From NCBI RefSeq assembly GCF_003918875.1, contig NW_025766747.1, positions 1,116,001 through 1,180,000 on the forward strand: DNA of 64,000 nt, given 5' to 3'. Below, one piece after another: positions 6,001-64,000 of this stretch. Position numbers and translations under genes: made by a program. The stretch's first letter is position 1. Each line of letters begins with the position of its first letter. The notes under the pieces were generated by a model. The model was not told where the DNA came from and ran no database searches. It was given only the letters and a program-made list of their open reading frames with translations. This stretch comes from Haliotis rubra. Lineage: Eukaryota.

Positions 6001-9000
6001 ATATATACACAGACATCACCATTGTATAATACACAGACCATCACCAGTATATATACACAGACATCACCATTGTATTATACACAGACCATCACCAGTATAT
6101 ATACACAGACATCACCATTGTATTATACACAGAGCTTCACCATTATATATACACAGACATCACCACCATATACACAGAGCATCACCGGTATATATACACA
6201 GACATCACCAGTGTATAATACACAGAACATCACCAGTATATATACACAGATATCACCAGTGTATATATACACAGAGCATCACCGGTATATATACACAGAC
6301 ATCACCAGTATATAATACACAGAGCACCAGCAGTGTATATACACAGAGCATCACCAGTGTATTATACACAGACCATCACCAGTATATATACACAGACATC
6401 ACCATTGTATTATACACAGACCATCACCAGTATATATACACAGACATCACCATTGTATAATACACAGACCATCACCAGTATATATACACAGACATCACCA
6501 GTGTATTATACACAGACCATCACCAGTATATATACACAGACATCACCATTGTATTATACACAGACCATCACCAGTATATATACACAGACATCACCATTGT
6601 ATAATACACAGACCATCACCAGCATATATACACAGACATCACCATTGTATTATACACAGACCTTCACCAGTATATATACACAGACATCACCATTGTATAA
6701 TACACAGACCATCACCAGTATATATACACAGACATCACCATTGTATTATACACAGACCATCACCAGTATATATATATACACAGACATCACCATTGTCTAA
6801 GACACAGACCATCACCAGTATATATACACAGACATCACCAGTGTATAATACACCGATGACATCACCAGTATATATACACAGAGCATCACCAGTGTATTAT
6901 ACACAGACATCACCATTGTATTATACACAGACCATCACCAGGATATATACACAGACGTCACCATTGTATAAGACACAGACCATCACCAGTATATATACAC
7001 AGACATCACCATTGTATTATACACAGAGCTTCACCGGTATATATACACAGACATCACCAGTGTATATACACAGAGCATCACCGGTATATATACACAGACA
7101 TCACCAGTGTATAATACACAGACACCACCAGTATATATACACAGACATCACCATTGTATTATACACAGACCATCACCAGTATATATACACAGACATCACC
7201 AGTGTATAATACACAGAGCACCACCAGTATATATACACAGACATCACCATTGTATTATACACAGACCATCACCAGTATATATACACAGACATCACCATTG
7301 TATTATACACAGAGCATCACCAGTATATACACAGATACACCGGATCACCAGTCACAGAGCATCACCGGTATATATACACAGACATCACCAGTGTATAATA
7401 CACAGAGCATCACCAGTATATATACACAGACATCACCAGTGTATATACACAGACCATCACCAGTATATATACACAGAGACATCACCAGTGTATTATACAC
7501 AGACCATCACCAGTATATATACACAGACATCACCATTGTATAATACACAGACCATCACCAGTATATATACACAGACATCACCATTGTATTATACACAGAC
7601 CATCACCAGTATATATACACAGACACAGACCATCACCAGTATATATACACAGACATCACCATTGTATATATACACAGACCATCACCAGTATATATACACA
7701 GACATCACCATTGTATAATACACAGACCATCACCAGTATATACTATACAGACATCACCATTGTATATATACACAGACCATCACCAGTATATATACACAGA
7801 CATATACAGACATCACCAGTGTATAATACACAGACCATCACCAGTATATATACACAGAGCATCACCAGTGTATTATACACAGACATCACCATTGTATTAT
7901 ACACAGACCATCACCAGGATATATACACAGACATCACCATTGTATTATACACAGACCATCACCAGTATATATACACAGACATCACCATTGTATTATACAC
8001 AGACATCACCGGTATATATACACAGATATCACCGGTATATATACACAGAGCATCACCAGTATATATACACAGACATCACCAGTGTATAATACACAGAGCA
8101 TCACCAGTATATATACACACAGACATCACCATTGTATAATACACAGACCATCACCAGTATATATACACAGACATCACCAGTGTATTATACACAGACCATC
8201 ACCAGTATATATACACAGACATCACCATTGTATTATACACAGACCATCACCAGTATATATACACAGACATCACCATTGTATAATACACAGACCATCACCA
8301 GTATATATACACAGACATCACCGGTATATATACACAGACCATCACCAGTGTATATATACACAGAGCATCACCGGTATATATACACAGACATCACCAGTAT
8401 ATATATACACAGACACATCACCAGTATATATATACACAGACATCACCATTGTATTATACACAGACCATCACCAGTATATATACACAGACATCACCATTGT
8501 ATTATACACAGAGCTTCACTGGTATATATACACAGACATCACCGGTGTATATACACAGAGCATCACCGGTATATATACACAGACATCACCAGTGTATAAT
8601 ACACAGAACACCACCAGTATATATACACAGACATCACCAGTGTATATACACAGACCATCACCGGTATATATACACAGACATCACCAGTATATAATACACA
8701 GACCACCACCAGTGTATATACACAGACATCACCAGTGTATATACACAGACCATCACCAGTATATATACACAGACCATCACCAGTATATATACACAGACAT
8801 CACCATTGTATTATACACAGACCATCACCAGTATATATACACAGACATCACCATTGTATATATACACAGACCATCACCAGTATATATACACAGACATCAC
8901 CAGTGTATATACACAGACCATCACCAGTATATATACACAGACATCACCATTGTATATATACACAGACCATCACCAGTATATATACACAGACATCACCAGT

Positions 9001-11293
9001 GTATAATACACAGACCATCACCAGTATATATACATCACCAGTGTATATACACAGACATCACCATTGTATTATACACAGACCATCACCAGTATATATACAA
9101 GACATCACCATTGTATAATACACAGACCATCACCAGTATATATACACAGACATCACCATTGTATTATACACAGACCATCACCATATATATACACAGACAT
9201 CACCAGTGTATAATACACAGACCATCACCAGTATATATACACAGACATCACCATTGTATTATACACAGACCATCACCAGTATATATACACAGACATCACC
9301 ACCATTGTATAATACACAGACCATCACCAGTATATATACACAGACATCACCATTGTATTATGCACACACCAGTTATGTATATCACCACATCACCATTGTA
9401 TATACACAGACATCACCAGTATATACACAGACATCACCAGTGTATAATACACAGACCATCACCATTGTATATATACACAGACATCACCATTGTATATATA
9501 CACAGACATCACCGGTATTATATACACAGACATCACCAGTGTATAATACACAGACCATCACCAGTATATATACACAGACATCACCAGTGTATTATACACA
9601 GACCATCACACCAGTATATATACACAGACATCACCATTGTATTATACACAGACCATCACCAGTATATATACACAGACATCACCATTGTATAATACACAGA
9701 CCATCACCAGTATATATACACAGACATCACCAGTGTATTATACACAGACCATCACCAGTATATATACACAGACATCACCATTGTATTATACACAGACCAT
9801 CACCAGTATATATACACAGACATCACCATTGTATAATACACAGACCATCACCAGTATATATACACAGACATCACCATTGTATTATACACAGACCATCACC
9901 AGTATATATACACAGACCATATTGACATCACCATTGTATAATACACAGACCATCACCAGTATATATACACAGACATCACCATTGTATTATATACACAGAC
10001 CATCACCAGTATATATACACAGACATCACCATTGTCTAAGACACAGACCATCACCAGTATATATACACAGACATCACCAGTGTATAATACACAGACCATC
10101 ACCAGTATATATACACAGAGCATCACCAGTGTATTATACACAGACATCACCATTGTATTATACACAGACCATCACCAGGATATATACACAGACATCACCA
10201 TTGTATTATATGCACAGACCATCACCAGTATATATACACAGACATCACCATTGTATTATACACAGACCATCACCAGTATATATATACAGACATCACCATT
10301 GTATTATACACAGACCATCACCAGTATATATACACAGACATCACCATTGTATTATACACAGACCATCACCAGTATATATACACAGACATCACCATTGTAT
10401 AATACACACACCATCACCAGCATATATACACAGCCATCACCAGTATATAACACACAGAGCACCACCAGTATATATACACAGACATCACCAGTGTATATAC
10501 ACAGACCATCACCAGTATATATACACAGACATCACCAGTGGATAATACACAGACATCACCAGTATATAATACACAGACCATCACCAGTGGATAATACACA
10601 CACCATTACCAGTATATATACACAGACATCACCAGTGGATAATACACAGACCATCACCAGTATATAATACACAGACATCACCATTGTATTATACACAGAC
10701 ATCACCAGTATATATACACAGACATCACCAGTGTATTATACACATACGATTACCAGTATATATACACAGACATCACCAGTGGATAATACACATACGATTA
10801 CCAGTATATATACACAGACATCACCAGTGGATAATACACAGACATCACCAGTATATATACACAGCCATCACCAGTATATAACACACAGAGCACCACCAGT
10901 ATATTTACACAGACATCACCAGTGTATATACACAGACCATCACCAGTATATATACACAGACATCACCAGTGGATAATACACAGACCATTACCAGTATATA
11001 TACACAGACATCACCAGTATATATACACAGACCATCACCAGTATATATACACAGACATCACCAGTATATATACACAGACCATCACCAGTATATATACACA
11101 GACATCACCATTGTATTATACACAGACCATCACCAGTATATATACACTGACCATCACCAGTATATATACACAGACATCACCAGTGTATAATACACAGACC
11201 ATTACCAGTATATATACACAGACCATCACCAGTATATATACACAGACATCACCAGTATATATACACGGACATTGTATTATACAGAGAGCTTCC
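1..11293. repeat. Large satellite array, ~23-25 bp monomer forming a ~48 bp dimer (ACACAGACATCACCATTGTATTATACACAGACCATCACCAGTATATAT); extends beyond the left window edge
   Basis: Continuous tandem repetition from base 1. The last degenerate unit (CATTGTATTATACAGAGAGCTTCC) ends ~11293. All TQTSP/IHRHH ORFs are translations of this repeat. Confidence 0.98.
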
Positions 11294-17300: not shown

Positions 17301-20278
17301 TAAGCCTGAAAATGTTCACTACTTTCACCAAGTTTTCTAACTGAGTAAATGAAGAAATTCTGTGTTGCTGTTAAAAATTCTGGATATATTTGGAAACTGT
17401 TAGAAAGGATGATCCAGTCGACTAAGGCGCCGTATGCAGAGTTGTGTCCCCAGGGCACGCAAGGAAACTATGATCGTTGGTTCGAAAACCCAATAGCCTC
17501 TAACATATTTCGGGGTTTGACAGCACTACACCCATGCATGAGGGTCTAATATTTCCTTCAGCTAGGGATTTCTGAACACTGAGGAAGATTATAATTCATG
17601 AAAATAGTTCAAACATTGCAACTTCATTCAATACACTTCACGTTCTCACCATCTACAAATGAGTGGGCAATCCTTTTCACGTCTTCTATTTTCTCCATCA
17701 TGCTCTCTGATGCATCCAGACATAATATTGTATCCAGCGAATCAGCTCGTGGTGGAACTGGCACTTCTGACATAATGTAAAAATAGCGAATGGGTGTAAA
17801 GATATGGATATGTCATTTATAGGTTACAAACCCGCCTATCCAACTGATGTGAATCATGTCCTGTCACAAATGTTAACAATACATGTTGGTAATACTTTTT
17901 GAAAGCTTTACTATTGTCGCGAATATTTTACTCGTCATCGGAACAACTTTTGAGCCTAAAGAGTCACATGACTTACGACAAACGAACACGTCGGAACTAT
18001 CCGCCATTGTTCTTATTGAATCTAACATGATCTGAATCTGTACATATGAAGATGTAGAGATAAGTCTTCGTGGCAAAAATACACACCATCCATCTTTGCT
18101 CTTTCGACAGCTTCAGTCAGTCTGAGTATCTGTAGATCTTCTTCAGCACCACCACCTCGAGCATGTCTCATCAATGCCATCATACCTTCAGATACGTTGC
18201 CTGTTCAACGAAACAACTTAACAATATCAGTGCTCTGAAAGTCCCCTTTTGGTGTAAAAGATGTTATTAAAGATAAAAATCACATCCATAACCGTTTACA
18301 ACATATGTACCTTCTTTCATTTTAACTGTCGTCCGATCTGGCGAAAACGCAGTGCCCTGGGAGGATCTGAGGCAAAACAATATACATAAAATTTAGTGTG
18401 ATCTGTCAACCATATTATTTATTCGAGGAAAATGGATCTCATCGTCAGTAACATTGGATTTGAGATCAGTATCATTTCGGGCTGTGAACAAGTACATTAA
18501 ATACATTAAAAAAGAAACATGAAAACCAACAAATGTAGAAGATACTTACGTCTCTTGGGATTGGAATGATGGTGATGGTAGTTTCTTGTGATCTGCATCC
18601 GCTTGATCCGAGGAAGGTTGTTTGAGTTCCAGTTTTGGTAAAACATTTGCATATTCACCAACCGCGGCTTCACCCTTGAGACTGATTAACATGAGAAAAT
18701 AGTCATTATTTAAGTAAACATATACATAGAACTTTCTGAAGTACCGAACGGACACCACTCACCTTTCAGCCAGATCTGCTTTACTGACTGGTATTCTTGC
18801 CCCTCCTTGTTGCAAGTTTGGGAGTGGAGATGGATTTGTGTTAGATACTGCAAGCCGAAGCTGTTTCATTTGTGAATCGATAGGCAGACCACGGTCTGGT
18901 ATGGTGTTGGGTGAGGATGGAGATCTCTTCATGGATTCTGTTCGCATCTTCAGATCTTCCTCAATGCCAGCCAGCATGCTTAGGATCTCATTAAGTTCAC
19001 TCTGATCTGCGGATTCAACATCACGTAAATAATTACCTTTGGATATTCACATGCTTTACTTTTATTTCATGTAAGATATGTCCATCCTCATTTGAATGGT
19101 ATAAGGCTGAAACTTACATCACATAATCTACTACAAACATACCAGTATTTCTTCGATTCTCCTGCGACGACCCCCTTGTCATGAAAGTGGACCTCATACT
19201 TGAAGAGGCAAGAGATCTGAAATTTATATTCATACCTGTCATTTCTAAAACATATCTCAACAATAATCTCCACATAAAAGGTGATGGAAAGACCCTGTAC
19301 CTATATAAAAATGTAATAACCATTCCTCAAGAAAGGTTTAACCACTCATTTCCACATTATTACCATGGTAACAATTAAACTAATATGGAAGATTCAGGTG
19401 TGCTTTAACTTATTGTGAGCAGCATAGTATGTCAATGCTAGTATTAATATTGTGTGGAACAGGACAAGACGTTTCATATTGATATAATATTTCATAATTC
19501 CTGCCGGCTTTGTTCCGCAGCAGATGACCAATGCTTTTCAAGGTCCCTTTGAGTTGCCTCGTCCATGTTGTATCTCAGGTGCTCCACATCACCAGTTTCA
19601 AAGATATCCAGTGACACTTCTGGTACAGTTTTTGTACAGTCAAATACCAAGTCTTTGAACATTTTCTCTAGATTAGTCCTCCCTTCTATCATACTTTGCA
19701 GTGAACATTCATCCTGATGAACCACCTCAAAAAGAGTGGACTTTGGAGTGACGGCAACTACCATTGCCTTGTATTCCTTATACACATTTGCAACAAACTT
19801 TCTGCAGTGGTTGAAATTGTCCTCTTCAAGACCTGAACACATTGAGTTTTGGAACGAAGGGGGCAAATATGTTATGCTAAATTGTAGCTTGGTAAATTTT
19901 AGTGTTGCTGACAGATTAAGATCATTCCAGACGAATGTGAGGAGCCTTTGCTTTTGTTCGTGATCTGAAAGGAATAAATGAAAATTGTATATACACCTGT
20001 CATAAATCATTAAAAAATGCAAAGGAATTCCTGTCATGCTTGCCTACTTTTTAGAAGATAAATGTTTTAAAAAAAAACTTGTAACGTGTATGAGCGATTA
20101 ATAGAAACTCTACATTTGGTTCACCTTGTAGACCCACGTCTAGTACATGGATGTCCACTATGGTACAGCACTGCCCAAGTTTCACAAGTCTGTTCCCTTC
20201 CACCTTTCTGAAATGTACCTCTTCTGCGACCAGACTGCCATGACTATGAAGGTGCCCAGAAGCATTTTCTAGAGACAT
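11301..20278 (-). CDS. Paralogue A: multi-exon gene, N-terminal unannotated domain - VWA - 2x MIB/HERC2 - WWE protein
   Basis: Exons 5'->3' (approx.): 20278-20125 (putative ATG MSLEN), 19963-~19505 (N-domain), 19217-19143, 19006-18763, 18675-18549, 18366-18311, 18200-18087, 17860-17828, 17766-17650 (DTILCLDASES MIDAS), 17305-17183 (GLEDIAEQYGLEENVAVV), 15910-15836, 15709-15587 (RVLFITDG), 15409-15305 (PIIWIPVG), 14919-14830, 14590-14471, 14088-13889 (PPLGSRVMRGPEWMWKNQDTEGPGTI, MIB/HERC2 #1), 13782-13638, 13289-13204 (GPHW..DGGEGSTGVV, MIB/HERC2 #2), 12705-12635 (VRWDNG), 12379-12297, 11882-11729 (VWQWQDGAGQWRLY, WWE), 11504-11431, 11365-11301 (TAA). Phases are compatible except for an uncertain donor after the N-domain exon. 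The start codon is uncertain. Confidence 0.85.
12075..12233 (+). mobile_element. tRNA-derived SINE (family 1)
   Basis: A-box-like TAGCCTAGTGG, B-box GGTTCGATTCC, a body shared with the copies at 40530 and 45192, and a (CACT)n tail. Confidence 0.85.
16100..17020 (-). mobile_element. Decayed mariner-type transposase fossil in an intron of gene A
   Basis: Frameshifted fragments match mariner transposase motifs in order: EFKR..LEDDPRSG..TAITKEIDDKV, KKAESVPSAGK(deletion)GILLLD, LRENIK, an HPP(Y)SP-like segment and DAVMTAVVDL. Many stops and deletions; TIRs not resolved. Confidence 0.8.
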
Positions 20279-20631
20279 TTTCTCCGCTGTGGTCACTGTA
20301 GGTCTTTTTCCTGTAATTGATTTGAATATACAATGTGGTCAGTATTTTGTACAGACTGTTCTTCATCTTTCCGTAGTTGAGTACGTGTATCTGCATATTC
20401 CTTGGTGCCGTATCAAGATTATATCACGCTGAATCCTCTATGAACATATTTATGGCTATGTTTACGGCTGTCACAGGACACCGGATGACAAGAAAGCAAA
20501 TGTGTGAATATTGTCTCAGTTCCTTCATATCATGCCTCAACTCAACCCCAGACCCCTTTAATAACCACATGGGCCAAAGGATCGCATGGAGTATGATATA
20601 TAAACTGACATAACCCTATCACATACCATAG

Positions 20632-20900
20632 CATCAGAATGTAATGCACTTTCACCGACATGTCAATGTAATGCACTTTCACCGACATGTCAATGTAATG
20701 CACTTTCACCGACATGTCAATGTAATGCACTTTCACCTATATGTCAGTGATATGCACTTTCACCTTCATGTCAATGTAACGCACTTCACCTACATGTCAC
20801 GGTAATGCACTTTCACCTTCATGTCAATGTTATGCACTTTCACCTTCATGTCAATGCTATGCACAATCACCTACATGTCAATGTAATGCACTTTCACCTC
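20632..20900. repeat. 27-bp minisatellite (ATGTCAATGTAATGCACTTTCACCGAC)
   Basis: About 10 tandem copies; gives the MSVKVHYID and HFHLHVNVM pseudo-ORFs. Confidence 0.9.
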
Positions 20901-21615
20901 TTTCAAAAGCAAGGCATGTTATTCCAGTTTCTTTCCAGCTTGCATGATATGCATCACCATTTAAAATCCGTTGATACGTTATGTTTTACCGGAATGAGGT
21001 GTGATACGGATCTAGTTATAACACTCCATGTGATGGGGACGTATCTGTGTTGCCTGTATGGCGCATGCAAAATGTCTCCAGTCATTGATAAATATATGAT
21101 AGTTATAGTTTGGCCTCTCTGTGGAACGTATTACATAGTGAGACTAGATATTCAGAATAACAAAATGAATGTTTTCGCAATGGCTACGAATCTCGACAGT
21201 GATATACGCATACTTGTTGACGAATAAAGAGTCGGTTACCTCCCTTGCACTAGCCAAGCACACACAAGACCGTCATAGATACGTCTTTCTACAAATCACG
21301 TCCTGGGTAAGTGGTATTAATACATTTCTTCGTGGATAATTTCCTATAGTTTCATTTACGAATTGGTCATGGCCATCTGTAGGTCATGAACCTTCTTTAT
21401 ACTTTGAATATTGTGAATAGGACCATTGTGCTATTACAAGTAGGATATGACTCTGGCCCTATCATGTCCGAACACACTTTGTAATAGTTTCATATTATTC
21501 GTATTATTCCAAGTAGAGGTTTAAAAGCAATATCTACTCACAGTTTTTAAGGTGAAGGTTGTAATTCCTACAGCGAAGTAATGTAGCAATCAGGAGGATA
21601 TCATCCACCACTAAC

Positions 21616-21637
21616 GGGAAATCCCCACCTATAAATA
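21616..21637 (+). promoter_or_regulatory. NF-kB/Rel-type site (GGGAAATCCCC) immediately followed by a TATA box (TATAAATA), between divergent genes A and B
   Basis: Motifs are seen directly at 21616-21626 and 21630-21637. A plus-strand donor CAG|GTAAGT at 21937 is a candidate first exon of B, and a minus-strand donor GAG|GTAACC near 21240 is a candidate first exon of A. Confidence 0.55.
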
Positions 21638-22162
21638 TCTGTCCCTTGAGAGTGAGTTGGCGAAGTGCCAGAAACACGTGATCGAGAAATCAACAACGCA
21701 CGGTATGCTTTGACCTATTTCTTTCTCCAAAATACGTCGAAGTGTCACTGATATCGTTTCGTGAACAGATCGGTGAAAAGAGTCGAGCTGACCTATCGAC
21801 AGCGAGAGACACAATACGTGCTGTAATACACCACAATGGGAGCACATGAGCAGTGATAGCTGAGTCCTCTCGTACATTTGTGTAATATTGGGAGAGTTGC
21901 GTCCCTTCATCCATACATACGTTTCGACTTTTCCAGGTAAGTCAAATTGAAACGTGCTTAAGAGAAATTAATAGTGCCTTGATCTCTGACTCATTGTCTT
22001 TTGGGACATGAAGAAATATATTAGTCAGCTTTCTACATGCAAAGTCTTGTTTCTGAAGCCAATGTACAATTAGTTACAAAGATTTGTATTTTCTTTGATA
22101 GGGAACTTAGTACTATGCATTTTACAGAGAAGCCCAGTACAAATGACATTTAGTCTTATATA

Positions 22163-22346: not shown

Positions 22347-23409
22347 ATGTATGGTGGTATGGGATGTAATCATGTCGGACACTATTCATGTGGACATATA
22401 ACGTACTGGTTTATGATGCGTGCTATCTGCATTGAAGGTCGGTCTGTGTATGTAGTTGTATGTACAGTTAAAAACTATCGCTGTAACAGCAGCCATGCAT
22501 GTGTGCTGGAGGTGTTGGGTTATCAGTTCCCAACATGACTGAACTGATAACTAGAATAACAGTTTCAAAGTTGATATTTGAGCGTTGATGTGATACTTCA
22601 GTGTTGACTGTTCGGCTAGCTCTCCACCATTTCAGTAAGTGCTCTGATGTAATATATATCCCGTGGGTGTTAATGCACGGAGTTGGTTCACGTACTGAAC
22701 ACATTCCAGATGGGAGTCGGGTGGACAGGTTTCATTGAGCAGCAGAATATATACACCGACAGCATCTTTGGGCTGTCTACAAACCACCAACTAATACCAA
22801 ACAACATAATACTTGATAGTACATGCGTTCTGGCATAACTTATATAAAGAATTATTTCAAATGTAACTTATGTTAATGCATGATCTTGTACTGTTGATAT
22901 ATTTTAGGTATGTCAGTATTAAGGGATTTTTTCTCTGGAAATGATTCAAGTGATTCAGGTGATTTACTCTATCAAAGAAAGTGTTTTTCATTTAGACCTA
23001 AAAGTCGCACACATGACACAGTGCGGGGATGATGTGTAACGACTGAAGAGGGAACTCCGGAATTAATGTCAGGTTCCTCTGGATCCCCATCTGTACACAT
23101 GGAGGGGTGCTGTGACATAACTATAACCAGGCACTTATGGAAGTTCCTGGAAGATGGGCATAACCGTTCAGGTAATGGTGGGCTGGATAGGTAGACTTTT
23201 TTCTCACGACAGGAAGTGGGGGAAGGGCATGTCAGGAGACAACTCCCGACCCTCATGAATAGAATAAATATAACACTGTGACCAACACCAACATACAATA
23301 ACTTAAATAGTATTTCAGTTAGTTTATAAAAGACGTTTATATTCACTATGGAATCAGTATATGTCAAGAACAACAAATATACTCCAAAGTCGTTACTGGA
23401 TGTGGATGC

Positions 23410-23571: not shown

Positions 23572-26500
23572 AGAGATGCCCCGCCGTGGCCTTTATCCGC
23601 TGTGACTGGGCGGATGGCGGGAGCAAGAACCGTTCTGTCACACATACTACACGATGGAAGCTTCATGTCTGTGCACCGGACACTCAACAAACCGATGAAA
23701 GTGATGTTTTTCGACTTTTAGGGAGTGACACCTTTACCCACCTGCATCATTTTACAGATAGGTTGTGGAAGGAACATGACACTGAACTGACTCATATTGA
23801 AAGAGGTTTGATATTCGCATGTCAACACAGACAGTATTCTGAGGAAAAGATGGATGGATTCAAGCGAAACATATTGGCGTCCTTTCAACATCTCATCAAT
23901 ACACCCTCCACACACAGGAACTATGCTGTGTCGCTAGAATTGTATGTTGTCTTAATCGGCATATGAAAACAGACTAACAATGAAATGTAATGTTATGGTC
24001 AAATTCACAATAGCGCTCAAAACAGTAAACATATTGATTAAATGAGTTATCTGTTTTTACCTATGGGGCGTCAGAACTCAACTGCTTCGTGTGTATATTC
24101 AAATCAAAATATGAGACAAGCATGATAATGTTTCAAACAGTTATAGTTACTGTTAATCACATCCCTGTCCATGATTCAGGCTTGAAGAAAAGAGCGGCTA
24201 TGACAACGGCGGCAGAACGTCAACGTTATCAGGTATGTCCGGTTGCACGCTCTCAGTGTAATGTAAATAATTGTCATCAGGTACATAATCTATAGTTTCA
24301 TGTTCTGCTTTCAGTCACCCGTAACGGAATGTTTCCCATTCTTGTCTCAAAACATGCATCTATTTCCACAGACACACAGCTAGAGCTACAAAGGATTGAA
24401 GACCGACTTCAAGAACGAATGTCTTGCGAACTTAGAAACATGGAAAACCTTGTCCGCACTCTGATTCAGACAAATCAAACTTATATGGAAGGAGAGGTCC
24501 GGAACATTGCACTGGCTGTACGTTCAGAACCAGATGAACGTGACGCAATACAAGTGTCCACTGAAGGGGTTGCCAGTGTACATGGACACGTCCTTGAAGC
24601 CGATGAACGTGACGCAATACAAGTGTCCACTGAAGGGGTTGCCAGTGTACATGGACACGTCCTTGAAGCCGATGAACGTGACGCAACACCGTTGTCCACT
24701 GAAGGGGTTGCCAGTGTACATGGACACGTCCTTGAAGCCGATAAACGTGACGCAACACCGGTGTCCACTGAAGGGGTTTCTAATGTCCAAGGACACGTTC
24801 CTGAAACAGATGCAGGAGCACCACCGAAGGGAGACCCTGCCAGGTCCGGGGGCACCAGTGTTAACGATCAGCGGGAGTCACCAGTTCCTGAAACTACAGA
24901 TAGGTAGGTATAAAAATGACGAACAGTATGAGATGTTTAATAGAAAAAATGTGATGTGTTCAGATGATTGCTATTACATCAGAACCTGTTCCTTGAAGCA
25001 GGTTTACCATTAATGGGTTAAACTTCACAAATTCTCGTTCAACAAAAGTGAATGATTTGAATATCTGATTTATATCCGCAGCTATCGAGACAACAGAGCT
25101 GAGGGAGGTAACGACAACGGGTTAGAAGAAATGCCTGGTTCTCGTGACGTGGATCAAAACATTGTACCAACGACAGGCCTTGATGATACATTGGAGACAC
25201 ATACATCATGGCTGAGGTATTTAGTACGTCATGAGAAACCTAGATGTTAACATATGCTCTCCGCCGGATACTGCTTTCTCGCAAATGTTTCAAAGTATTT
25301 ACATGTACTTTTGATAAACTCACAAAATATACCATCTGATCATAATGTGAAATATAGTTGCGGGCAACGATGAGGTCTCCTTGGCTTTACTTTCTATCTA
25401 TTGTATCTGAGGGCTAGATATCATCGTCCAAAACGGAGCCAGAACACATGTTTCAACAGGTGAGCGGATCTTCCAAATACAGCCGGGGTCACGGGGGTCA
25501 TGTACTTTTTTAAGAAGTTCCGGAGAAGAAATAGTTCCCTCTTTAAAAGGCTGTATCTCAGTTGTTCTTGGGTCTACGTTCAAAACAATTAGTGTTCTGG
25601 AATCACCAGGACATCATCTACCATACTGGCAGAATGGCAGAATTTGCACATTTTGGGAGCAAACTACTCAGAAAAACTGAAAACAAAAATAACTGCCAAA
25701 CGGTACGTTTTAGCGACTTGACCTGTCCAGGCAAAATTGTTGGGTATTCGATTGTGCATCTGTGCAAGAAATTTGGAAGTGTTGGAACAATTAGTTCTTG
25801 AAATATTTGCTGTCAAACGTTAAAAGTTTGGAATTAATTTTGAATTATCACCCTTTTGCTATTGGGCCAAGAGCCTAGAGATTTTTAAGGGGGAATATCT
25901 ACACCTCGGTGCGCATCTGTGTGATTTTTTGTAAGTGATTCGGAGCATTGGCTTAGGAGTTATGTTTGGTACAAAAATCGGCGGAATAATAAATAATAAT
26001 AATAATCCGAACGATTACAATAGGTCTCCTGCCCAGAGGCAAGGAGCCCTAATTAACCGAATATTGATTATTGCCTTTCATTAATGTAAATAGTGTATAA
26101 ACATCAACTATTTTCATGCAAGATAACTTCCTTGATCATGTATTTTATAACTGGGATTTTCCTGGCTGGGATTTTCCTGGGATTAACGTTGACCTTCCGG
26201 CTCTCTGTATGACATACTTAGATACAGCTGTATGACATACTTAGATACAGCTAGTGTTTGCTAGACATTAGGTGCCGCACTGAGGGAAATTGTATTGATT
26301 GTCAAACCTTGTTGTTTCAGTTCGGAGAATATCCAGCAAATGTCACCAAGCGAAATAATAAGCAGTAAGAACGTCACATTCTCTCATAGTTTTATTTTAC
26401 TGCGTTACAGTGTAACCTGTGCCCGGTTTCAGTAAAGTACATTAATGACTGTTTACATGGACTTGTATAATTTATATAATAATATATGATATTTTACACA

Positions 26501-29500
26501 TCTGGACACAATGATACAGTTGTTTGAAGAATACCTCTGAGGAGTTAATGTTCACCTTTTAAGCATGTGTGAGGTTCTTATTGTTTAGAGAACTATTATG
26601 AAGCCCAACAACTGCTAACAGCTCTGACCATAAATCTCGACGGATGGAAAAGGTTGACAGAGGCAACTGCACTGGCCCTGGAAGCTGGTATGCATTTCTT
26701 CATTCATATATATTTGTGTGGTTGTAGATATATATATACTAAGCAGCAAAAGAAACGTCAGTTTGGAATTTTCCTTCGCAGAAACGGATAACTGTAAACT
26801 CATTTAATGTTTTGATTGTATATTTTTGACAACATCTTCAACTTTACCTGAGCAAAGACATTCCTTCCCAAACTCAGAATGGAACCCAGGAAATGGTCTC
26901 AGAAACGCAACATGATCTCGGAGATGGTACGGTGTTCTCCATGCTGCACGTGCTGTTCACAAGACCAGCCCTATAAAATGCACCCCAAAACCTGGTTGAA
27001 CATTACAACGCCAGCAGGATGCCGCGACTCACGACAGCTCAGAGGAACCAGGCGCTAGGAAGACTTGAAGCTGGCCACACTGCACAAGCCGTTGCCAATC
27101 ACTTCCAGGTCACCGTTCGGACCATCTACAGGCTGCAGCAACGTTTCCGGGCCACCGACACCTCAAATGATCGCCTCCCGTACTGGCAGACCAAGGGTGA
27201 CCACAAGACGACAAGACCGCCATGTTGTGCGACAGCATGTACAGAATCCCTTCATGCAGGCATCCGAAACAGCATGCCAGACAGTGGGAACACACGGAAG
27301 ACCAGTCAGTACTGATACAGTACGCCGACGTCTTAACAGCTGGAGCCTCCATTGCCGTGGACCTTACCGTGGACCTATCCTCACCCCTCGTCATCGGCGT
27401 GAACGTCTAAAGTTTGCCCTACAACACCAAAACTGGTGATACAGGCAGTGGAGAACTGTTCTGTTCACGGATGAGAGTCGGTACTGCGTATCAACTGAGT
27501 CTCATGGGGAGGTGCAAGCATCATGGTATGGGGTGGAATAGGCCTGAACCAGAGAGTGGGCCCTGTGGTGTTACAGAACCTTGGTCCAGGGAGAGGAGGC
27601 GGCATCACAGCGGTGCGCTACATCGACCAAGCTCTCAGACCCCACGTCATACCACATTTCGCAAGTCACTGGAACAACATTTTCCAGTATGATAACGCCC
27701 GGGCCCACGCCCCAGAGCTACACGGGACTTCCTTCAGCAGAACGGTGTCAACATTATGCAGTGGTCAGCCCTTAGTCCTGATTTAAACCCAATTGAACAT
27801 CTTTGGGATGAAATTCAGAGGAGACTGAATAATGTCATACCAAGGCCGAACACACCCGATTTATTGTGCCAGGCCTTTCTCAGAGTGTGGTTCCAGGTGC
27901 CAATGGCCTTCATCAATGGATTGGTGCACTCCATGCATACACGCTGTGCTGCAGTTATTGCCGCTCGTGGTGGTCACACTAGATACTGAAGTCAAGGGTC
28001 TCAATGGGCTGCAAACGTTCACGTAATGACTTGAAATTGTGCTGAGTCATTCATTGATGTGTCAGGATATTGTACACAAAAGATGTTTTTGATCTGCTTA
28101 TTATGTCCATTTCTGTAATGATTTGATTACAGTGCCTATCTAATTTTGAATTCATACTGACGTTTTTCTTGCTGCTGAGTATATATGTACTGATTCACCC
28201 TTTGCTAAGGATCAAATCTATGATGTGGGGTCTAATTTGGTTTAAATATCTAAGCTTATTGTAAGCATGGATCCTAGGTTTCAGTATGCCATTTCATCTT
28301 GTGGATCCCATACCTGCTATTGACAGGTGTTGTGTTCTTGTCAATGACTCGTTCCATGATTTGCAAAATGGTTGATTGGTGCCACGAAAACCATTTTTAT
28401 GGTTACTCGTGTATACAGTGCATAAGGTTAGAATAAAGTGACTTTTTGCCTAAAGAGGGGTTACGATATTTTTATTTTCCCAGTTTTAAATGGATACAAT
28501 TTCAAATTATAAATCTACGTTTAATTAAAGTTGTTAATTTCTGTGATCCTTAGCAAAGTGTGAGTAGTATATATTCATGATCTCCTTTGTTGTGTCTAAA
28601 ATAATATATTGCGATTTGCGCTCCTTATTATTGTGTCATTTCATAGTATATATATTTGCAGTATTTGGATATCACGCAAGTTAACATAGCGGTATCATTG
28701 ACGTTTTCATCCTATTTATCAGAGTAGGATATGGTTAATTGCGTTTATATCATCTATGGCGTGGTTCCCTTGATCGACGAACATTTGTAACACTTTATTC
28801 ATTTTACTCAAAGCCCATCCCACACCTCCAAGAACTAATTCAGCCGTCACCGTGCTGTGTGTCGATGTTTCCGAAAGTATTGGAGAAAAAGGCCTGAGAG
28901 AAATGAAGCAGACGGTCAACAGGTTTATCGATGGTACGGACACACTTCAATTCTACAGCATCTATGTCATAAATTGCACAATAGTATGTACGTGCATCTA
29001 AAGGTATTTAACAGACACCAACTCCTCACACTATCTTGATTAGATTGATTGTTCTACTAGATTCGACCTCAAAGTTACTTACAGATTGAATACACCAAGC
29101 AGGACTTAATTCTGACTAATAGCTTTCATGATGTTCTGACCAGAACAGAAACAATCAGAAGCCTCATTCTGACTACTATGTGCAATGTTATAACAAACAG
29201 AAATCTCATTTTGACTACTAGGTGCAATGCTATTATAGCAACAGAAATCTCATTCTCACTACTAGGTGCAAAGTTAAAACAAACAGAAATTTCACTGTGA
29301 CCACTAGGTGCAATGTTATAACAACAGAAATCTCATTCTCACTACTAGGTGCAAAGTTATAGCAAACAGAAATCTCACTGTGACTACTAGGTGCAATGTT
29401 CTAACAACAGAAATCTCATTCTCACTACTAGGTGCAAAGTTATAACAAACAAATCTCACTGTGACTACAAGGTGCAATGTTATAACAACAGAAATCTCAT

Positions 29501-35626: not shown

Positions 35627-35729
35627 CTAAACAGTAGCTCTATACTGTTAAACTGTACATGAGGTGACACAGTTGCTGTATGCAGACTGGATACGTACAT
35701 ACCCGGAATTTTACTCTAGCTGTGTACCG

Positions 35730-47400: not shown

Positions 47401-47846
47401 TACTTCACCTTTTGGTTCGTCTATCAAATCTTTCTCCACTCTGGTTGAAACTGTGAAAGAATGTGGTACAGGGCACTGTGTACTGTCCATCTGATTTCAG
47501 TGCTACGTTGATGTCTGACTTCAATGACACGCAGCTACATACAAACTTTCTTAGCAGTCTGAAAAATTCATCTGATCTCTCGGGAAATGGTGTTCTTCTC
47601 GGATGCCGGAAAGTAAAATGTAGAGGCGGGGATCTCACTGCAACCAGTCTAACGTTAATTGTTTCATAAACTTCACTGACAAAAGAGTACAGATGTTTCT
47701 TTTCCTGAATGACTCGTCTGCAGAATTCGTCTTCAACAGAACTGTTGTCTTTCGTTGGTTTTAACTCAACTGTTGACGTCACCGCTTCCTCAGGCTCTTC
47801 CCAGTGCAGACATGCTAGTAGTTCCCCTGTTGTGAAGGAAATCACT
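38451..47846 (-). CDS. Paralogue C: multi-exon gene, N-terminal unannotated domain - VWA - 2x MIB/HERC2 - WWE protein (start exon probably ~48050-48080, uncertain)
   Basis: Exons (approx.): 47846-47409 (N-domain), 46875-46057, 45898-45731, 44280-44156 (DTVLCLDTSGS), 43967-43845, 43570-43500 (GTTP), 42585-42467 (RIIFITDG), 42263-42159, 41963-41874, 41627-41508, 41400-41202 (LPPLGTRVERGPDWKWGNQDADGPGTV), 40935-40791, 40314-40226, 40095-40025, 39897-39830, 39216-39054 (YVWQRSDDGTTWHNY, WWE), 38788-38719, tentative terminal exon 38458-38451. Confidence 0.85.
40530..40693 (+). mobile_element. tRNA-derived SINE (family 1)
   Basis: GGGGTCGCCTTGTGGTTAAAGGG...GGTTCGATTCCCCACATGGGTACAA...CACTCACTCA, matching the 12075 copy. 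Confidence 0.85.
42795..43325 (+). mobile_element. SINE family 2 sequence interrupted by an unrelated ~290-bp insertion
   Basis: A SINE 5' part (CAACCCATGCTTGTCATAGGATGCGACT...TTGGTTGACACAT, to ~42865) and a 3' part (~43200-43320, ...GGAATATTGCTG...GGCGTTAAACAACAAAC) flank a different AT-rich segment. Confidence 0.5.
44833..45016. repeat. 11-bp microsatellite-like repeat (CTATGACAATG)
   Basis: About 16 degenerate copies. Confidence 0.9.
45192..45356 (+). mobile_element. tRNA-derived SINE (family 1)
   Basis: GGGGCGGGGGCGTAGCCTAGTGGTTAAAGCCTTCGCTCG...GGTTCGATTCCCC...TTGCTAAAAGCGGTGTAAACC. Confidence 0.85.
46871..47002. repeat. 44-bp x3 tandem repeat spanning a splice acceptor of gene C
   Basis: GAGTACTACAGAATAAGACATATATTGATATAAGTACACCACGT at 46871, 46915 and 46959. 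Confidence 0.9.
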
Positions 47847-51300: not shown

Positions 51301-52379
51301 TATATACATACACAATACCTGAATGGATGGAAGACCTATGGCGTGTACGAACCTGTTTGACCTGTGCCTCGCTCAAGAAAACACTCGTTAAAGAATACAT
51401 CCACTACAACATGTGAGGGGTCATCTGTAATCACCTGTCCATTGAGGGTGCATCGAATATGTAGGTCTCCCATGGCAATCTACAAACAATCATTTGTGAC
51501 AAAATAATACAATCGTAAGGTTATAATTAAGTATAAGTACCATATGGGGGCAGACACTGTTATCATTCTTTATTCAATATAACTGCAGATGCTGTAGAAA
51601 TAGAAGCATAAACATATATGAATATGCATGTAGTTGTACTAGCCCTTGTGCTTGTGCGAGAAGCCCCGACTTACTATCATGTGATCAACTGAGCAAGTCG
51701 TTGTCATGTTACTAAATATAGATTTAGGCGACACTGGTACCGAGCTTATCAAACATGTGATTGTTACTTTAAAATCGATATGTTTGCCTATCAAGGAACA
51801 AGGATAGAAGGCGTACTTATCTGCACGTATTCATTCAGTTTGCAGTCTTCCAACACACTTGCCAGTGGTACTTATATCCTCGATCTTGCTAAATATAGAC
51901 ATGACATGGCGTACATGACCTGATCACCCACACGGCAGATATCTGTATACAACTAACTTGCCAGTGGGTTACGTCCCCTTAGTTGAATATCACAGGATCA
52001 CTCGGCTCGAACTGTTCAATATCCACTCAAGTGTCAGCTTGTGTATGTTGGTAATGAAATTCAAGATCTATGTTCACCAAGGTATTGCCAAGGACGCGTG
52101 TGGTTCCTACATTTGATTTCTGACTTATAAATGTGTTTGCAAAGCATACATACTGGTTCATTGTTTTGTTTCAATAGTCACAATTCATACAAGTATAATC
52201 TTTTGTATAACAACGACCTCCCATTAGAGAGATTATCAATATGACAACTGATATTTTATCATACAAATTGCTTCATTCAAGTCACAGAGTCAATAAGTAA
52301 ATATGACTCTACATATATTCTTAATATCACCAGCTTATAAGGTACTGACAGGTGTATGGGCTGAGAATCTTCCTTCCAC

Positions 52380-61700: not shown

Positions 61701-64000
61701 TTGAGTCTAGAAACACGCGTGAACTGTTTATTCAGCAAGATTGTGGCTACTCACCGTCTATAAAACTATATGCGGTTTCCTTCATCTTTTTAATTCCTCG
61801 CTCGCTCATTGTGCTCGACGTGTCCAGACACAAGATTGTATGGAGGCCCCTGGCAGTTGGAGGCATAGGAACATCTATATACCGAAACCAAACACAGAGA
61901 ATTTAGTTATAGAGACATACCACCAACTGTCACTTTGTCAAATAATTTTTAGATCAAACAAGAAATTATTGCAGCACTTTCAATGCCTACCATCCTTCAT
62001 TGCAGATTCCACGGTGGCTACCAATCTCTGAACCCCAGCTGAAGTTCCTTGGACACCATAGCGACTGAGGAAACTTCGTGCCTTACCTAAGAATTTAAAA
62101 ACATTTTAATTAATTGCAATAAGGTTTTTTTAAGCTCCTAAAGCATTAGTAACATACTTTGTTGAATATGAGATAAACTACATATCATTCTAATGATCGT
62201 AATGGTGATGAAATAGCCTTATTGTGAACGGCGGATTATACTGGTAGAGTAGAATATGCCAACCCTATTAGAGAACACCTAGTGTCGTCACTGATTTTCG
62301 GTGATCTATTCATCTAATTTTCGTCTATCATGCTAAAATGGTATCTGTTTCGTCGGACGATTGAGACTGATTATTCCCAGTGGTTGAGGAGTGATATTGT
62401 TCAATCACGGCTTCATGAAAGGCATGCATCTCTAACACTGCATGGAATATGTCAATTGTCATTAGAATGAAAACGATTTTACCTACCGCCGGTGCTGCCA
62501 TCTAGTACCGATGAATGCAAAGTCTCCACGGGTAAACTGGATCGACAAAACGTTCAGAAAATTAAGACTGAACACAACAAACGCTAAACACAAAATAATC
62601 GAATTACATACATAATATGGTGCCCTACATACAACAAAAACATTTTCAGAAGACCCAACAGTGTTGTTTTGCAAAAGTAAATGCTTTGATGATGATGTTA
62701 GATTGAAAATACATTGAAAAAATGTAAGGCACCCTACCCAGGAGGATCATCTTCGGAGCGACTGTCCAGTTCTAGGCAAGTTTCATTTCTTGTAGTGACG
62801 GATGGTGAATGGTCTTTTCTAGCATCCTCCCCGGACAGCGTTGATTTGAAGACAGACTGGTGTTCGGGATACGTATCTTTCATCTCCTCAGTGGAGGAAT
62901 AGTTAGCAGGTTCTTCATCGTCAGAAAAGCAGTTATCATTATGAGACACTTCCGACGTCGTGGATGGGGTGGTAAAAGAGTTCTCCCGTTGGGATTGCTC
63001 CATCCCTGACTTTCCTTCAAACGAACCGGGCATTATTTGCTCTTCTTCAGACCCTGTGTCCACTTCCTGTTGCTCAAAGCCTAAGTTCGTGATGCTATCA
63101 TTACCAGTTTCTGCCGTGTGCCCGGTAGTGCCATGGAGAGAAACCAGCGTATCATGCTGGCATCCTCTAGTTTCATCAGAGATACCAGCACTCCTTCCAT
63201 TGTGAGTTTTGTCGACCAACTGATGAACAGAGTGAGCCAGCTGCTCGACTGAGTGCCTTAGCTCCTCGTTGAATGCCTTCTGCTCATCAAACCGTTTTCT
63301 AACATCGATCTTTTGACGATGTATATTTTCCTCCAATAAGCCGAAACGAACATCAATCTCAGAATCTAAAAGTAGATTACCTCCTGTCATTGTCATGTGA
63401 AGACTAATACAGTTACCAGGCGAGACAGTTACCTGGTTAGTTATATAATACATTCAGTACAAGTTCTAAGATTTCTTACCGTTGTGTGAAGTGTCCAGAT
63501 TCTGTGACCCTCCCGATTTGGAACTGTTTGAACAAAAGTAAATCATGAATTAAAGAAACATCAATGCAACAGCTTTCGTTAGTTATCATCTACATATAGT
63601 AACAAAGCACAAAAAGACGTGGAGACGAAGTGATCAGGCAGTTAACTTTTAACAGCATTTATCAATAAATGAATATTAACAGCAAACTCATCTATTCTGA
63701 ATACAAGAAGAGGTATAATGTACTTACCTTGTGTCCCCCTCTCGCACAATCATGACAGGCACATCTTCACTCTCAGTCTCCGATCCATATATGGTCATGG
63801 TAAATTCCATATCTTCAGCTACGAAATCCTGCTCTTGGTCCTGTACATGCAGAGTAAGATCAAGTGAAATATTTGTGTTTGTGGACTCTGAAAACGCACA
63901 CTTCAAGATATTTTCCAGCTCACCAACACGAGATGCTAAGTTGTCAAAACCGCCAGAACTGCGATGAAGGAGTTCTAGAGCAAATGGTTGACTTTGTACT
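55720..64000 (-). CDS. Paralogue D (5' end outside the window): N-terminal unannotated domain - VWA - 2x MIB/HERC2 - WWE protein
   Basis: Exons (approx.): >64000-63729, 63523-63480, 63384-62738, 62536-62487, 62086-61991, possible microexon 61932-61921, 61874-61755 (HTILCLDTSST), 61609-61487, 61338-61264, 60275-60159 (RVIVITDG), 59882-59778, 59280-59191, 59002-58874, 58453-58222 (LPRLGSRVVRGPQWKWGNQDSQGPGTV), 58058-57911, 57380-57289, 57136-57063, 56896-56804, 56590-56436 (WAWQWEAGSDEWRLY, WWE), 56045-55972, 55739-55720 (TAG, tentative). Confidence 0.86.
59401..59734. mobile_element. MITE in an intron of gene D
   Basis: Terminal inverted repeat ATTGTAAACACAAAAGT / ACTTTGGGTTTACAAT with internal TGACGTCA-type motifs. 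Confidence 0.6.
60297..61146 (-). mobile_element. Internally deleted Tc1-family transposon in an intron of gene D
   Basis: About 80-bp imperfect TIRs (CTGAAAGGCAAAAGAAATGTC...GAACCTATTTTTT / AAAAAATAGGTTC...GACGTTTCTTTTGCCTTTCAG). Transposase N-terminus MTRLTRDQPQQAIGRLHAG...PRSGQPRVTTRRQDRH, truncated after FSDESRYCIS. Confidence 0.92.

What the first reader, a model, noticed from the sequence alone, without database searches (positions are those of the whole stretch)
19573..19963. Conserved unannotated N-terminal domain, encoded by one exon, shared by all four paralogues
Seen by manual alignment. A: NFNHCRKFVANVYKEYKAMVVAVTPKSTLFEVVHQ...NLEKMFKDLV...EVSLDI. B (23572-23941): TFTHLHHFTDRLWKEHDTELTHIERGLIFACQHRQ...NILASFQHLI...AVSLEL. 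C (47409-47846): KKHLYSFVSEVYETINVRLVAVRSPPLHFTFRH...FFRLLRKFV...INVALK. D (63729-64000, partial): VQSQPFALELLHRS...ELENILKCAF...NISLDL. The shared pattern is H..F...(Y/W), a beta hairpin ending in H, a helix, then (V/I)SL(D/E). It is far more diverged than the VWA/MIB region. Inference: a small alpha/beta domain, possibly a remote TRADD-N-like fold, acting as the variable sensor or oligomerisation module.
Basis: partly seen in the sequence, partly recalled or inferred. Interest (0 to 1): 0.75.

Follow-up and report, generated by a model that had tools for sequence, protein, structure and literature searches.

The report
Divergent TRADD-N-like domain in abalone genes
The four abalone genes do share a real, fast-evolving N-terminal domain that standard databases miss, and it is most likely a very diverged copy of the TRADD-N adaptor domain used in animal cell-death and immune signalling, in a protein layout already published for a brachiopod.

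Summary
The window is Haliotis rubra DNA. It holds four paralogues (A-D) of a tandem family. The layout is N-domain, coiled coil, VWA, two MIB/HERC2 domains, then WWE.

**Observation:** the shared N-terminal domain is real. A profile built without A-D or their orthologues scores the exons at 75 (A), 52 (B), 59 (C) and 23 (D) bits; shuffled copies reach 7 at most. No Pfam family matches.

- A's exon is about 19505-19964, and spliced transcript contigs contain it.
- C's exon starts at 47826.
- The domain is not encoded by one exon. Its first three strands lie in the preceding ATG exon, across a phase-1 intron shared by A, B and C.

**Fold:** AlphaFold (core pLDDT above 90) gives three N-terminal strands plus an RRM-like beta-alpha-beta-beta-alpha-beta core, with invariant Trp and His.

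**TRADD-N relationship:**
- Solved TRADD-N matches only as well as other RRM-like folds (Z 4.7; best Z 6.8).
- Language-model neighbours are TRADD-like_N clusters (score 0.93).
- A Gly-Ser/Cys beta2-beta3 turn survives in 12 of 42 members.
- Kaur et al. 2021 list Lingula proteins with TRADD-N in the same layout.

**Verdict:** probably a diverged TRADD-N-like adaptor, which makes it a new variant of a known kind. The scan noted this gene cluster before, 122 kb upstream.

The parts
19505..19964 (-). Gene A (P0001, LOC124280418), second coding exon. It encodes residues 52-205: the last N-terminal extension strand with the invariant Trp64, the RRM-like core with the invariant His134 (core ends near 19603), and a low-confidence helical tail.
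   Evidence: Spliced contigs of runs X1-X3 cover 19507-19964 and join it to 20125-20309. The skipped DNA has CT..AC ends, which is GT..AG on the minus strand. The DNA run X5 lacks the joint. The acceptor reads tttcag|AT. The 3' junction as laid (19507/19218) is non-canonical; shifting it 2 nt gives a GC-AG intron at 19217-19504 and the same protein. The exon maps to P0001.
20125..20309 (-). Gene A, first coding exon (ATG at 20278; 51 codons plus 1 nt). It encodes the first predicted strands of the domain ('EEVHFRK...CCTIVDIHV').
   Evidence: It is present in the spliced contigs. The donor reads AAG|gtgaac. It is 100% identical to P0001 residues 1-51. It scores 21.6 bits with the leave-out family profile, against 6-7 for shuffles. 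AF2 places strands at model residues 17-21 and 35-44.
23572..23941 (+). Gene B (P0002, LOC124280417), N-domain core exon.
   Evidence: It is 100% identical to P0002 residues 36-159. The acceptor reads ttttag|AG and the donor TT|gtatgt. It scores 52.1 bits with the leave-out profile.
23066..23171 (+). Gene B, first coding stretch (ATG at 23066). A phase-1 donor precedes the core exon.
   Evidence: It matches P0002 residues 1-35 at 100%. The donor reads CAG|gtaatg. Transcript contigs join B's 5' exon (up to 21936) to about 22996, upstream of this ATG.
47409..47826 (-). Gene C (P0003, LOC124280415), N-domain core exon.
   Evidence: It is 100% identical to P0003 residues 40-179. The acceptor reads acaacag|GG and the donor AAG|gtgaag. 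It scores 59.0 bits with the leave-out profile.
51353..51473 (-). Gene C, first coding exon (ATG at 51473; 40 codons plus 1 nt). It carries 'LHIRC...VVVDVFF'.
   Evidence: It matches P0003 residues 1-41 at 100%. The donor reads CAG|gttcgt, phase 1. It scores 15.4 bits with the leave-out profile.
63728..64000 (-). Gene D (P0004), 3' part of the N-domain core exon, from the beta2-beta3 hairpin onward. It is cut by the window end.
   Evidence: It is 100% identical to P0004 residues 148-237. The donor reads AAG|gtaagt. It scores 23.3 bits with the leave-out profile. Full-length P0004 was found at E = 4.4e-13 in the large search.

Best explanation
The finding is the core exon of a roughly 155-170-residue N-terminal domain. 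The domain defines a tandemly expanded gastropod gene family, with at least 13 loci in Haliotis rubra. The family layout is N-domain, coiled coil, variable linker, VWA with a conserved DxS(x)S MIDAS signature, two MIB/HERC2 domains, then WWE.

The domain is encoded by two exons split by a conserved phase-1 intron. It folds as three N-terminal beta-strands added to an RRM-like (ferredoxin-like) beta1-alpha1-beta2-beta3-alpha2-beta4 sandwich. One Trp and one His are invariant.

It is most probably a strongly diverged member or offshoot of the TRADD-N superfamily (DEDD2-like clade), and has diverged beyond the reach of the Pfam models.

Inferred mechanism, not shown:
- As in TRADD, the sheet face and the beta2-beta3 turn act as an adaptor surface that recruits a signalling partner, such as a TRAF-type MATH-domain protein.
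- The coiled coil oligomerises the protein.
- The VWA, MIB and WWE domains engage ligands or ADP-ribose marks.
- Together these make an enzyme-free immune or cell-death scaffold whose adaptor end diversifies between paralogues.
For: **The domain is real.**
- Large-search hits share one architecture.
- Leave-out profile scores are 23-75 bits against 7 or less for shuffles.
- An iterated profile reaches Nucella, Littorina, Babylonia and Batillaria proteins at the same position, just before the coiled coil and VWA.
- It is under purifying selection. For A against its H. rufescens orthologue, pN/pS is 0.114/0.323 in the domain and 0.069/0.321 in the VWA-to-WWE region.
- It is transcribed and spliced.

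**Fold.**
- AF2 with 42 sequences gives mean pLDDT 80.8, with core blocks at 89-98 and pTM 0.78.
- The model superimposes on the Atlas model of a 955-aa family representative that carries the same three domains (TM 0.66-0.67, 158-165 residues, rmsd 3.3 A).
- Every top PDB match is RRM-like (Z 6.8 to 4.5). TRADD-N 1f2h_A scores Z 4.7 over 102-109 residues.

**TRADD-N link.**
- By language-model features, the N-domain of P0007 has TRADD-like_N clusters as its best named neighbours (0.93; 210 and 209 of 256 features; 15 of 30 hits). TRADD, DEDD and NCOA6 clusters follow further down.
- For P0012, a TRADD-like_N cluster ranks third, and two more appear among the structural neighbours (TM by target 0.59). 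Another appears for A's own model.
- A G-[S/C] pair sits in the beta2-beta3 turn in 12 of 42 members, including non-Haliotis ones. That is where TRADD-N has its 'uS' motif (PMC8195603).
- Alpha2 is kinked.
- Kaur et al. [quoted passage not shown]
Against: - No member matches Pfam TRADD_N, TRADD-like_N or NCOA6_TRADD-N, even at E up to 10. The family profile finds no TRADD chain in the PDB.
- Structural similarity to solved TRADD-N is no better than to IS200 transposases, xRRM/eRRM, ACT or Pop5.
- TRADD-like_N clusters were absent from the Atlas shape list for the better model.
- The 'uS' motif, described as strongly conserved in TRADD-N, is missing in 30 of 42 members; most of those have a Pro there instead.
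- The family's own invariant His has no counterpart in the published TRADD-N alignment, by eye.
- The language-model scores were not calibrated for parts of proteins.
- The mollusc TRADD-like_N cluster might itself contain fragments of this family.
- I could not align the Lingula proteins, so the architectural parallel rests on the paper's table.
- No partner or function was tested.
Confidence: 0.68

Rival explanations
1. It is an RRM-like domain of independent origin. In the gastropod lineage it occupies, or has displaced, the slot held by TRADD-N in brachiopod relatives. The resemblance to TRADD-N is only that of a very common fold.
For: There is no HMM match to any TRADD model. TRADD-N ranks 22nd and 30th among PDB matches at Z 4.7. 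The uS motif is mostly absent and the family has its own Trp/His signature. The extra N-terminal strands are not part of TRADD-N.
Against: Language-model neighbours are specifically TRADD-like_N, TRADD, DEDD and NCOA6 clusters, not other RRM-like families. TRADD-like_N clusters recur among Atlas structural neighbours. The downstream architecture is the same as in Lingula TRADD-N proteins. G-S/C is retained at the turn in a third of members, including the caenogastropod and unassigned (Logan) members.
Confidence: 0.2
2. It is an ACT-like small-ligand-binding sensor. The invariant His and Trp would form a ligand or metal site that regulates the VWA-MIB-WWE module.
For: ACT-domain structures are among the matches (1u8s Z 5.2-5.6, 3p96 Z 4.8-5.2, 1zpv Z 4.6). 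TRADD-N itself is described as structurally related to ACT (PMC8195603). In a domain averaging 16-23% identity, only His134 is invariant, and Trp64 nearly so (41 of 42).
Against: There is no Pfam ACT match. The Z scores are generic. I could not inspect the model coordinates, so whether His and Trp lie together is unknown. Both could simply be core-packing residues.
Confidence: 0.08
3. It is a nucleic-acid-handling RRM or HUH-type domain, because the best PDB matches are IS200/IS608 TnpA and xRRM/eRRM.
For: The top VIA matches are 2ec2_A at Z 6.0-6.8, 2vhg_A at Z 5.5-5.9, and LARP7 xRRM and hnRNPR eRRM at Z 5.5-6.3.
Against: There is no HUH motif. Only one His is invariant, and the residue two positions before it is usually Phe and otherwise mostly hydrophobic, with no member carrying a second His there. 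There is no Pfam RRM_1 or Y1_Tnp match; xRRM matched once, at E = 0.19. All Z values are below 8, which the tool flags as a common arrangement.
Confidence: 0.03

Closest known systems
TRADD-N superfamily, DEDD2-like clade (Pfam PF20694 TRADD-like_N, PF09034 TRADD_N; Kaur, Iyer, Burroughs & Aravind, eLife 2021, PMC8195603), in particular the Lingula anatina proteins XP_013388646.1 and XP_013417662.1
   Same: Both have an RRM-like two-layer alpha+beta sandwich with a kinked alpha2. A tiny-residue-Ser/Cys turn lies between beta2 and beta3 in a third of members. Both sit N-terminal to coiled coil + vWA + 2x MIB_HERC2 + WWE. Both show a lineage-specific tandem expansion in a slow-moving or sessile marine invertebrate. 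The nearest language-model neighbours are TRADD-like_N clusters.
   Different: There is no HMM-level match to any TRADD model. The uS motif is lost in most members. Three extra N-terminal strands are encoded by a separate exon. The family has its own invariant Trp and His. A-C have no detectable CARD or DED in front. The paper reports no such expansion in gastropods.
Human TRADD N-terminal domain (PDB 1F2H, 1F3V)
   Same: The core topology is the same; 102-109 residues superimpose at 3.5-3.7 A, Z 4.7.
   Different: Identity is 5-6%. The score is no better than for unrelated RRM-like folds. [quoted passage not shown] TRAF2-MATH binding is shown for TRADD and only inferred here.
Generic RRM-like / ferredoxin-like domains (IS200 TnpA, xRRM/eRRM, ACT, Pop5, ABM/NIPSNAP)
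   Same: They give the best raw structural scores (Z up to 6.8; Atlas TM 0.40-0.48).
   Different: The domain has none of their signature motifs or Pfam matches. The contexts are entirely different.

Membership tests
TRADD-N superfamily (PF09034 / PF20694 / PF13820) | RRM-like beta1-alpha1-beta2-beta3-alpha2-beta4 two-layer sandwich with a four-stranded antiparallel sheet | tested here: met
   The AF2 model has E70-79, H85-112, E114-120, E125-130, H133-158 and E163-171, with core pLDDT blocks of 89-98. All top PDB matches are RRM-like. Three additional N-terminal strands are present.
TRADD-N superfamily (PF09034 / PF20694 / PF13820) | Kinking of both alpha-helices | tested here: inconclusive
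   Alpha2 is broken at residue 142 (H133-141 / H143-158). Alpha1 is one continuous 28-residue helix by DSSP. The coordinates could not be inspected.
TRADD-N superfamily (PF09034 / PF20694 / PF13820) | Strongly conserved 'uS' motif (tiny residue, usually Gly, then Ser or Cys) in the beta2-beta3 turn | tested here: inconclusive
   G-[S/C] occurs in 12 of 42 members, including the Nucella protein (P0035) and two Logan-derived proteins of unassigned species (P0031, P0034). About half of the members have a Gly in the turn, and 17 have a Pro there instead. A has P-K-S-T. The motif is present but not strongly conserved.
TRADD-N superfamily (PF09034 / PF20694 / PF13820) | Significant sequence match to the family models | tested here: not met
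   hmmscan of the 4, 16 and 42 domain sequences against Pfam-A at E up to 10 lists no TRADD model. The A3 and A4 profiles find no TRADD chain in the PDB. The profile-profile test could not be run.
TRADD-N superfamily (PF09034 / PF20694 / PF13820) | Closer in structure or features to TRADD-N domains than to other RRM-like folds | tested here: inconclusive
   In the PDB the answer is no: 1f2h_A scores Z 4.7 against a best of 6.8. By Atlas features the answer is yes: TRADD-like_N clusters score 0.93 and take 15 of 30 hits, and one ranks third at 0.83. By Atlas shape, TRADD-like_N clusters appear in two of three lists, not.
TRADD-N superfamily (PF09034 / PF20694 / PF13820) | Architectural context of invertebrate expansions: an N-terminal adaptor region followed by variable regions, including vWA | tested here: met
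   All full-length members are N-domain, coiled coil, VWA, 2x MIB_HERC2, WWE. The paper's table gives the same order for Lingula with TRADDN-DEDD2 in that slot. The Lingula sequences themselves were not aligned here.
TRADD-N superfamily (PF09034 / PF20694 / PF13820) | Binding of a partner such as the TRAF MATH domain through the sheet face and the turn serine | not testable with these tools
   This needs interaction assays or complex modelling with Haliotis TRAFs.
HUH (Y1) transposase / nuclease | His-hydrophobic-His motif on beta3 and a catalytic Tyr | tested here: not met
   There is a single invariant His at the end of beta3. The residue two positions before it is usually Phe and never His. 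There is no PF01797 match.
Canonical RRM | RNP1/RNP2 motifs and a match to RRM models | tested here: not met
   There is no RRM_1 match in 42 members. xRRM matched once, at E = 0.19.

The most novel reading that the evidence does not exclude
The domain is not a TRADD-N descendant. It would be a new gastropod-specific RRM-like module that has displaced TRADD-N in an otherwise conserved lophotrochozoan scaffold. It would use its invariant His/Trp pair and the extra three-strand extension for a different job, such as ligand sensing or self-association. That would be a documented case of adaptor-domain displacement within an immune gene expansion.
Probability: 0.15. Interest if true: 0.6.

Novelty: new variant of a known kind. 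Interest (0 to 1): 0.42.

Why it matters
TRADD-N domains are adaptors that link death-fold signalling to TRAF-type ubiquitin ligases. Their large, architecturally diverse expansions in marine invertebrates have been proposed as an innate-immunity repertoire.

The published survey reports expansions in bivalves, brachiopods, cnidarians and others. It reports no gastropod expansion.

If the abalone domain is a TRADD-N derivative:
- Abalones and several caenogastropods carry a hidden expansion that current Pfam models miss. RefSeq calls these proteins 'uncharacterized'.
- The family alignment built here could seed a model that annotates them.
- The enzyme-free VWA-MIB-WWE proteins would gain a testable role, as scaffolds coupling ADP-ribose or ligand recognition to TRAF-like signalling. 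Abalone is a farmed animal that suffers from viral and bacterial disease.

The result is incremental for specialists. The architecture is already tabulated for Lingula.

Tried and rejected
- **Pairwise BLASTP of the four exon translations.** It gave only weak hits (best E = 0.003 in pairwise space), which was not enough alone.
- **Atlas feature search with A's exon alone.** It gave no usable hit.
- **Word-index search with the full-length alignment A2.** It returned only 4 proteins because the candidate list saturated. The same search with the domain alignment A4 returned only one fragment. Both blanks are uninformative.
- **Foldseek against the PDB.** Nothing came below E = 0.001.
- **Pfam scan of the 150-370-residue N-terminal extensions of the longer family members.** I was looking for CARD or DED, as in Lingula, and found nothing.
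- **Crassostrea and Dreissena relatives (P0059, P0060).** They lack the N-domain in the isoforms retrieved, so they could not serve as bridges.
- **Profile-profile test against TRADD-N.** I read the published TRADD-N alignment but did not retype it into tools, so this test was not run.
- **HUH nuclease and RNA-binding RRM readings.** Rejected on missing motifs.
- **'Chance similarity'.** Rejected on the leave-out profile scores.
Full report
**What is there.** The window is from the blacklip abalone, Haliotis rubra. The translated gene models match RefSeq proteins named only 'uncharacterized protein'.
- Gene A is P0001 (LOC124280418, 951 aa, minus strand).
- Gene B is P0002 (971 aa, plus strand, head to head with A).
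- Gene C is P0003 (1032 aa, minus strand).
- Gene D is P0004 (1058 aa, minus strand, running off the window end).

All four proteins, and every other full-length relative found, have one layout. There is an unannotated N-terminal part of about 150-200 residues, a variable linker, VWA_2/VWA, two MIB_HERC2 domains and a WWE domain. The VWA keeps a DxS(x)S MIDAS-type signature. No RING, HECT or other catalytic domain is present.

- A profile of the four segments searched against 1.84 billion representative proteins found 15 proteins and nothing else. All are Haliotis. The full-length ones share the architecture and the short ones are fragments.
- Searching with the C-terminal module brought in 44 relatives from Haliotis spp., Nucella, Littorina, Babylonia and Batillaria. 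It also brought in, more distantly, Crassostrea and Dreissena.
- An iterated profile finds the N-domain in nearly all gastropod members, always just before the coiled coil and VWA.
- I built a control profile from 44 members after removing A-D and everything at least 40% identical to them. It scores A's exon at 75.1 bits, C's at 59.0, B's at 52.1 and the partial D exon at 23.3. The best of 250 shuffles per exon scores 6-7 bits.
- Pfam matches nothing in the domain.
Identity among A-D is 16% in the domain against 39% in the VWA-to-WWE region.
- It is nevertheless under purifying selection. Between A and its syntenic H. rufescens orthologue (locus L001), pN/pS is 0.114/0.323 in the domain and 0.069/0.321 in the VWA-to-WWE region.

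**Exons and transcripts.** Contigs of three runs (X1-X3, one study, recorded only as 'RNA?') lie on gene A as a spliced product. They cover 20125-20309, 19507-19964, 19146-19218, 18763-19007 and further exons. Most of the skipped stretches (six of the nine gene A joints) end in CT..AC, which is GT..AG on the minus strand. A DNA run of the same organism (X5) lacks every one of these joints.

The exon is longer than reported. It reaches 19507 as laid. That junction is non-canonical, but a 2-nt shift gives a GC-AG intron at 19217-19504 and the same protein. C's is 47409-47826, and D's ends at 63728.

The claim 'encoded by one exon' fails. In A, B and C the preceding exon holds the start codon and 35-51 residues. 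In most family members this stretch carries a conserved 'hHFR...G....VVDh....L' pattern. These short exons score 21.6 bits (A) and 15.4 bits (C) on their own with the leave-out profile. The intron between the two exons is phase 1 and falls at the same alignment position in all three genes.

**Fold.** AlphaFold2 was run on A's residues 5-193 with the 42-sequence alignment A4. It gives mean pLDDT 80.8 and pTM 0.78, the five models agree (76.7-80.8), and the core blocks are at 89-98. An earlier 16-sequence run gave the same topology. The elements are:
- strands at 17-21, 35-44 and 53-61, the last ending in the near-invariant Trp;
- beta1 at 70-79;
- a long alpha1 at 85-112;
- a beta2-beta3 hairpin at 114-120 and 125-130, ending in the invariant His;
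- alpha2, broken at residue 142 (133-141 and 143-158);
- beta4 at 163-171.

This is an RRM-like (ferredoxin-like) sandwich with an N-terminal sheet extension. The model superimposes on the ESM Atlas model of another family member (TM 0.66-0.67, 158-165 residues, 3.3 A).

Foldseek finds nothing below E = 0.001 in the PDB. An exhaustive VIA-align search gives only RRM-like folds: IS200/IS608 TnpA (Z 6.0-6.8), LARP7 xRRM, hnRNPR/SYNCRIP eRRM, Pop5 and ACT domains. TRADD-N (1f2h_A) scores Z 4.7 over 102-109 residues, at rank 22 and 30. Structure alone therefore gives the fold class. It does not single out TRADD-N.

**Evidence that it is a TRADD-N relative.** Four further lines bear on this.
1. Protein-language-model features were searched among named Atlas clusters. 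For the N-domain of paralogue P0007, a member without the Gly-Ser turn, the best hits are a cnidarian and a mollusc TRADD-like_N cluster (0.93; 210 and 209 of 256 features). Fifteen of the 30 hits belong to that set. TRADD_N, TRADD, DEDD and NCOA6 clusters follow further down. For P0012 a TRADD-like_N cluster ranks third among all clusters (0.83).
2. TRADD-like_N clusters appear among the Atlas structural neighbours of A's first model (TM 0.46/0.51) and of the Atlas model of P0012 (TM 0.42/0.59 and 0.44/0.29). They do not appear in the list for the better model.
3. Kaur et al. 2021 describe TRADD-N as an RRM-like sandwich with kinked helices and a strongly conserved tiny-residue-Ser/Cys motif in the beta2-beta3 turn. 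That turn contacts TRAF2 in the TRADD complex. In this family G-[S/C] occupies the turn in 12 of 42 members, including P0035 (Nucella) and the unassigned P0031 and P0034. Most of the others have a Pro there.
4. [quoted passage not shown] That is the abalone layout, with TRADD-N in the slot of the unannotated domain.

Several points count against membership. No Pfam TRADD model matches any member. The family profile finds no TRADD chain in the PDB. The invariant His has no counterpart in the published TRADD-N alignment, by eye. I could not run a profile-profile comparison, because no TRADD-N sequence was available by reference.

I put homology to the TRADD-N superfamily at roughly 0.7-0.8. Because the signature motif is not conserved and the model match fails, I file the domain as a diverged variant that works like TRADD-N, not as a proven member.

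**Likely mechanism (inferred).** By analogy with TRADD and the 'adaptor plus variable region' logic of invertebrate TRADD-N expansions (PMC8195603), the N-domain would present a sheet and turn surface that recruits a signalling partner such as a TRAF-type MATH protein. The conserved coiled coil that follows ('RF..hEEEhSEQR') would oligomerise the protein. The VWA MIDAS, MIB/HERC2 and WWE domains would bind protein ligands and ADP-ribose marks. The strong divergence between paralogues, together with purifying selection within an orthologue pair, fits paralogue-specific partners better than a freely evolving sensor.

**Shown versus not shown.** The following are shown:
- the domain and its two-exon structure;
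- transcription and splicing of A;
- the fold class;
- the family distribution.

Not shown are any interaction, any oligomerisation, and any immune role.

**Novelty.** The scan already noted this gene cluster 122 kb upstream (s1-347352) and called the N-terminal domain new and the family mollusc-only. This report adds the fold, the probable TRADD-N identity and the published brachiopod counterpart. The paper reports TRADD-N expansions in bivalves, brachiopods and other groups. It lists only single NCOA6 and DEDD2-type proteins for other molluscs, so a gastropod expansion hidden from Pfam is a modest extension, not a surprise.

Noticed in passing
window 1-11272: An 11.3-kb tandem array of a 24-bp unit (about 469 copies, 82% matches) with strong strand asymmetry (GC skew about -0.4, AT skew about +0.27). 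It lies directly beyond the 3' end of gene A. In H. rufescens the syntenic position holds another 1061-aa paralogue instead.
   Followed up: partly
window 21541-21936: Transcript contigs place gene A's 5' exon (joined from 20309 to 21541) and gene B's 5' exon (21691-21936, spliced on to about 22996) only about 110-150 bp apart on opposite strands. This fits a shared bidirectional promoter, as another first-stage note (s1-325427) proposed.
   Followed up: partly
window 19217-19504: The intron after A's N-domain exon has no GT-AG placement. As laid, the junction is 19507/19218. A 2-nt shift gives a GC-AG intron and the same protein. The transcripts also differ from the window at about 3% of positions, so they come from another haplotype or individual.
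   Followed up: partly
window 24533-24812: Gene B's linker exon contains 4.1 tandem copies of a 69-bp (23-aa) unit in frame ('ADERDAIQVSTEGVASVHGHVLE...'). The linkers of the four paralogues are unrelated in sequence.
   Followed up: no
window 49242-51289; 52381-54671; 35099-36836; 29150-29697; 30495-31095: There are many long minisatellite arrays (units of 42-83 bp) inside introns and between the paralogues. They include a 2-kb array in gene C's first coding intron and a 2.3-kb array between C and D.
   Followed up: no
proteins P0026-P0029, P0032, P0036, P0041, P0042, P0047, P0048: Some family members carry 150-370 extra residues in front of the N-domain, with no Pfam match. In the Lingula counterparts a CARD sits there, so a diverged death-fold domain may be hidden in these extensions.
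   Followed up: partly
protein P0015 (LOC124280406, 402 aa), same H. rubra contig: This is a short paralogue with only the N-domain and coiled-coil region and no VWA-MIB-WWE. It may be a truncated gene, a pseudogene or a stand-alone adaptor.
   Followed up: no
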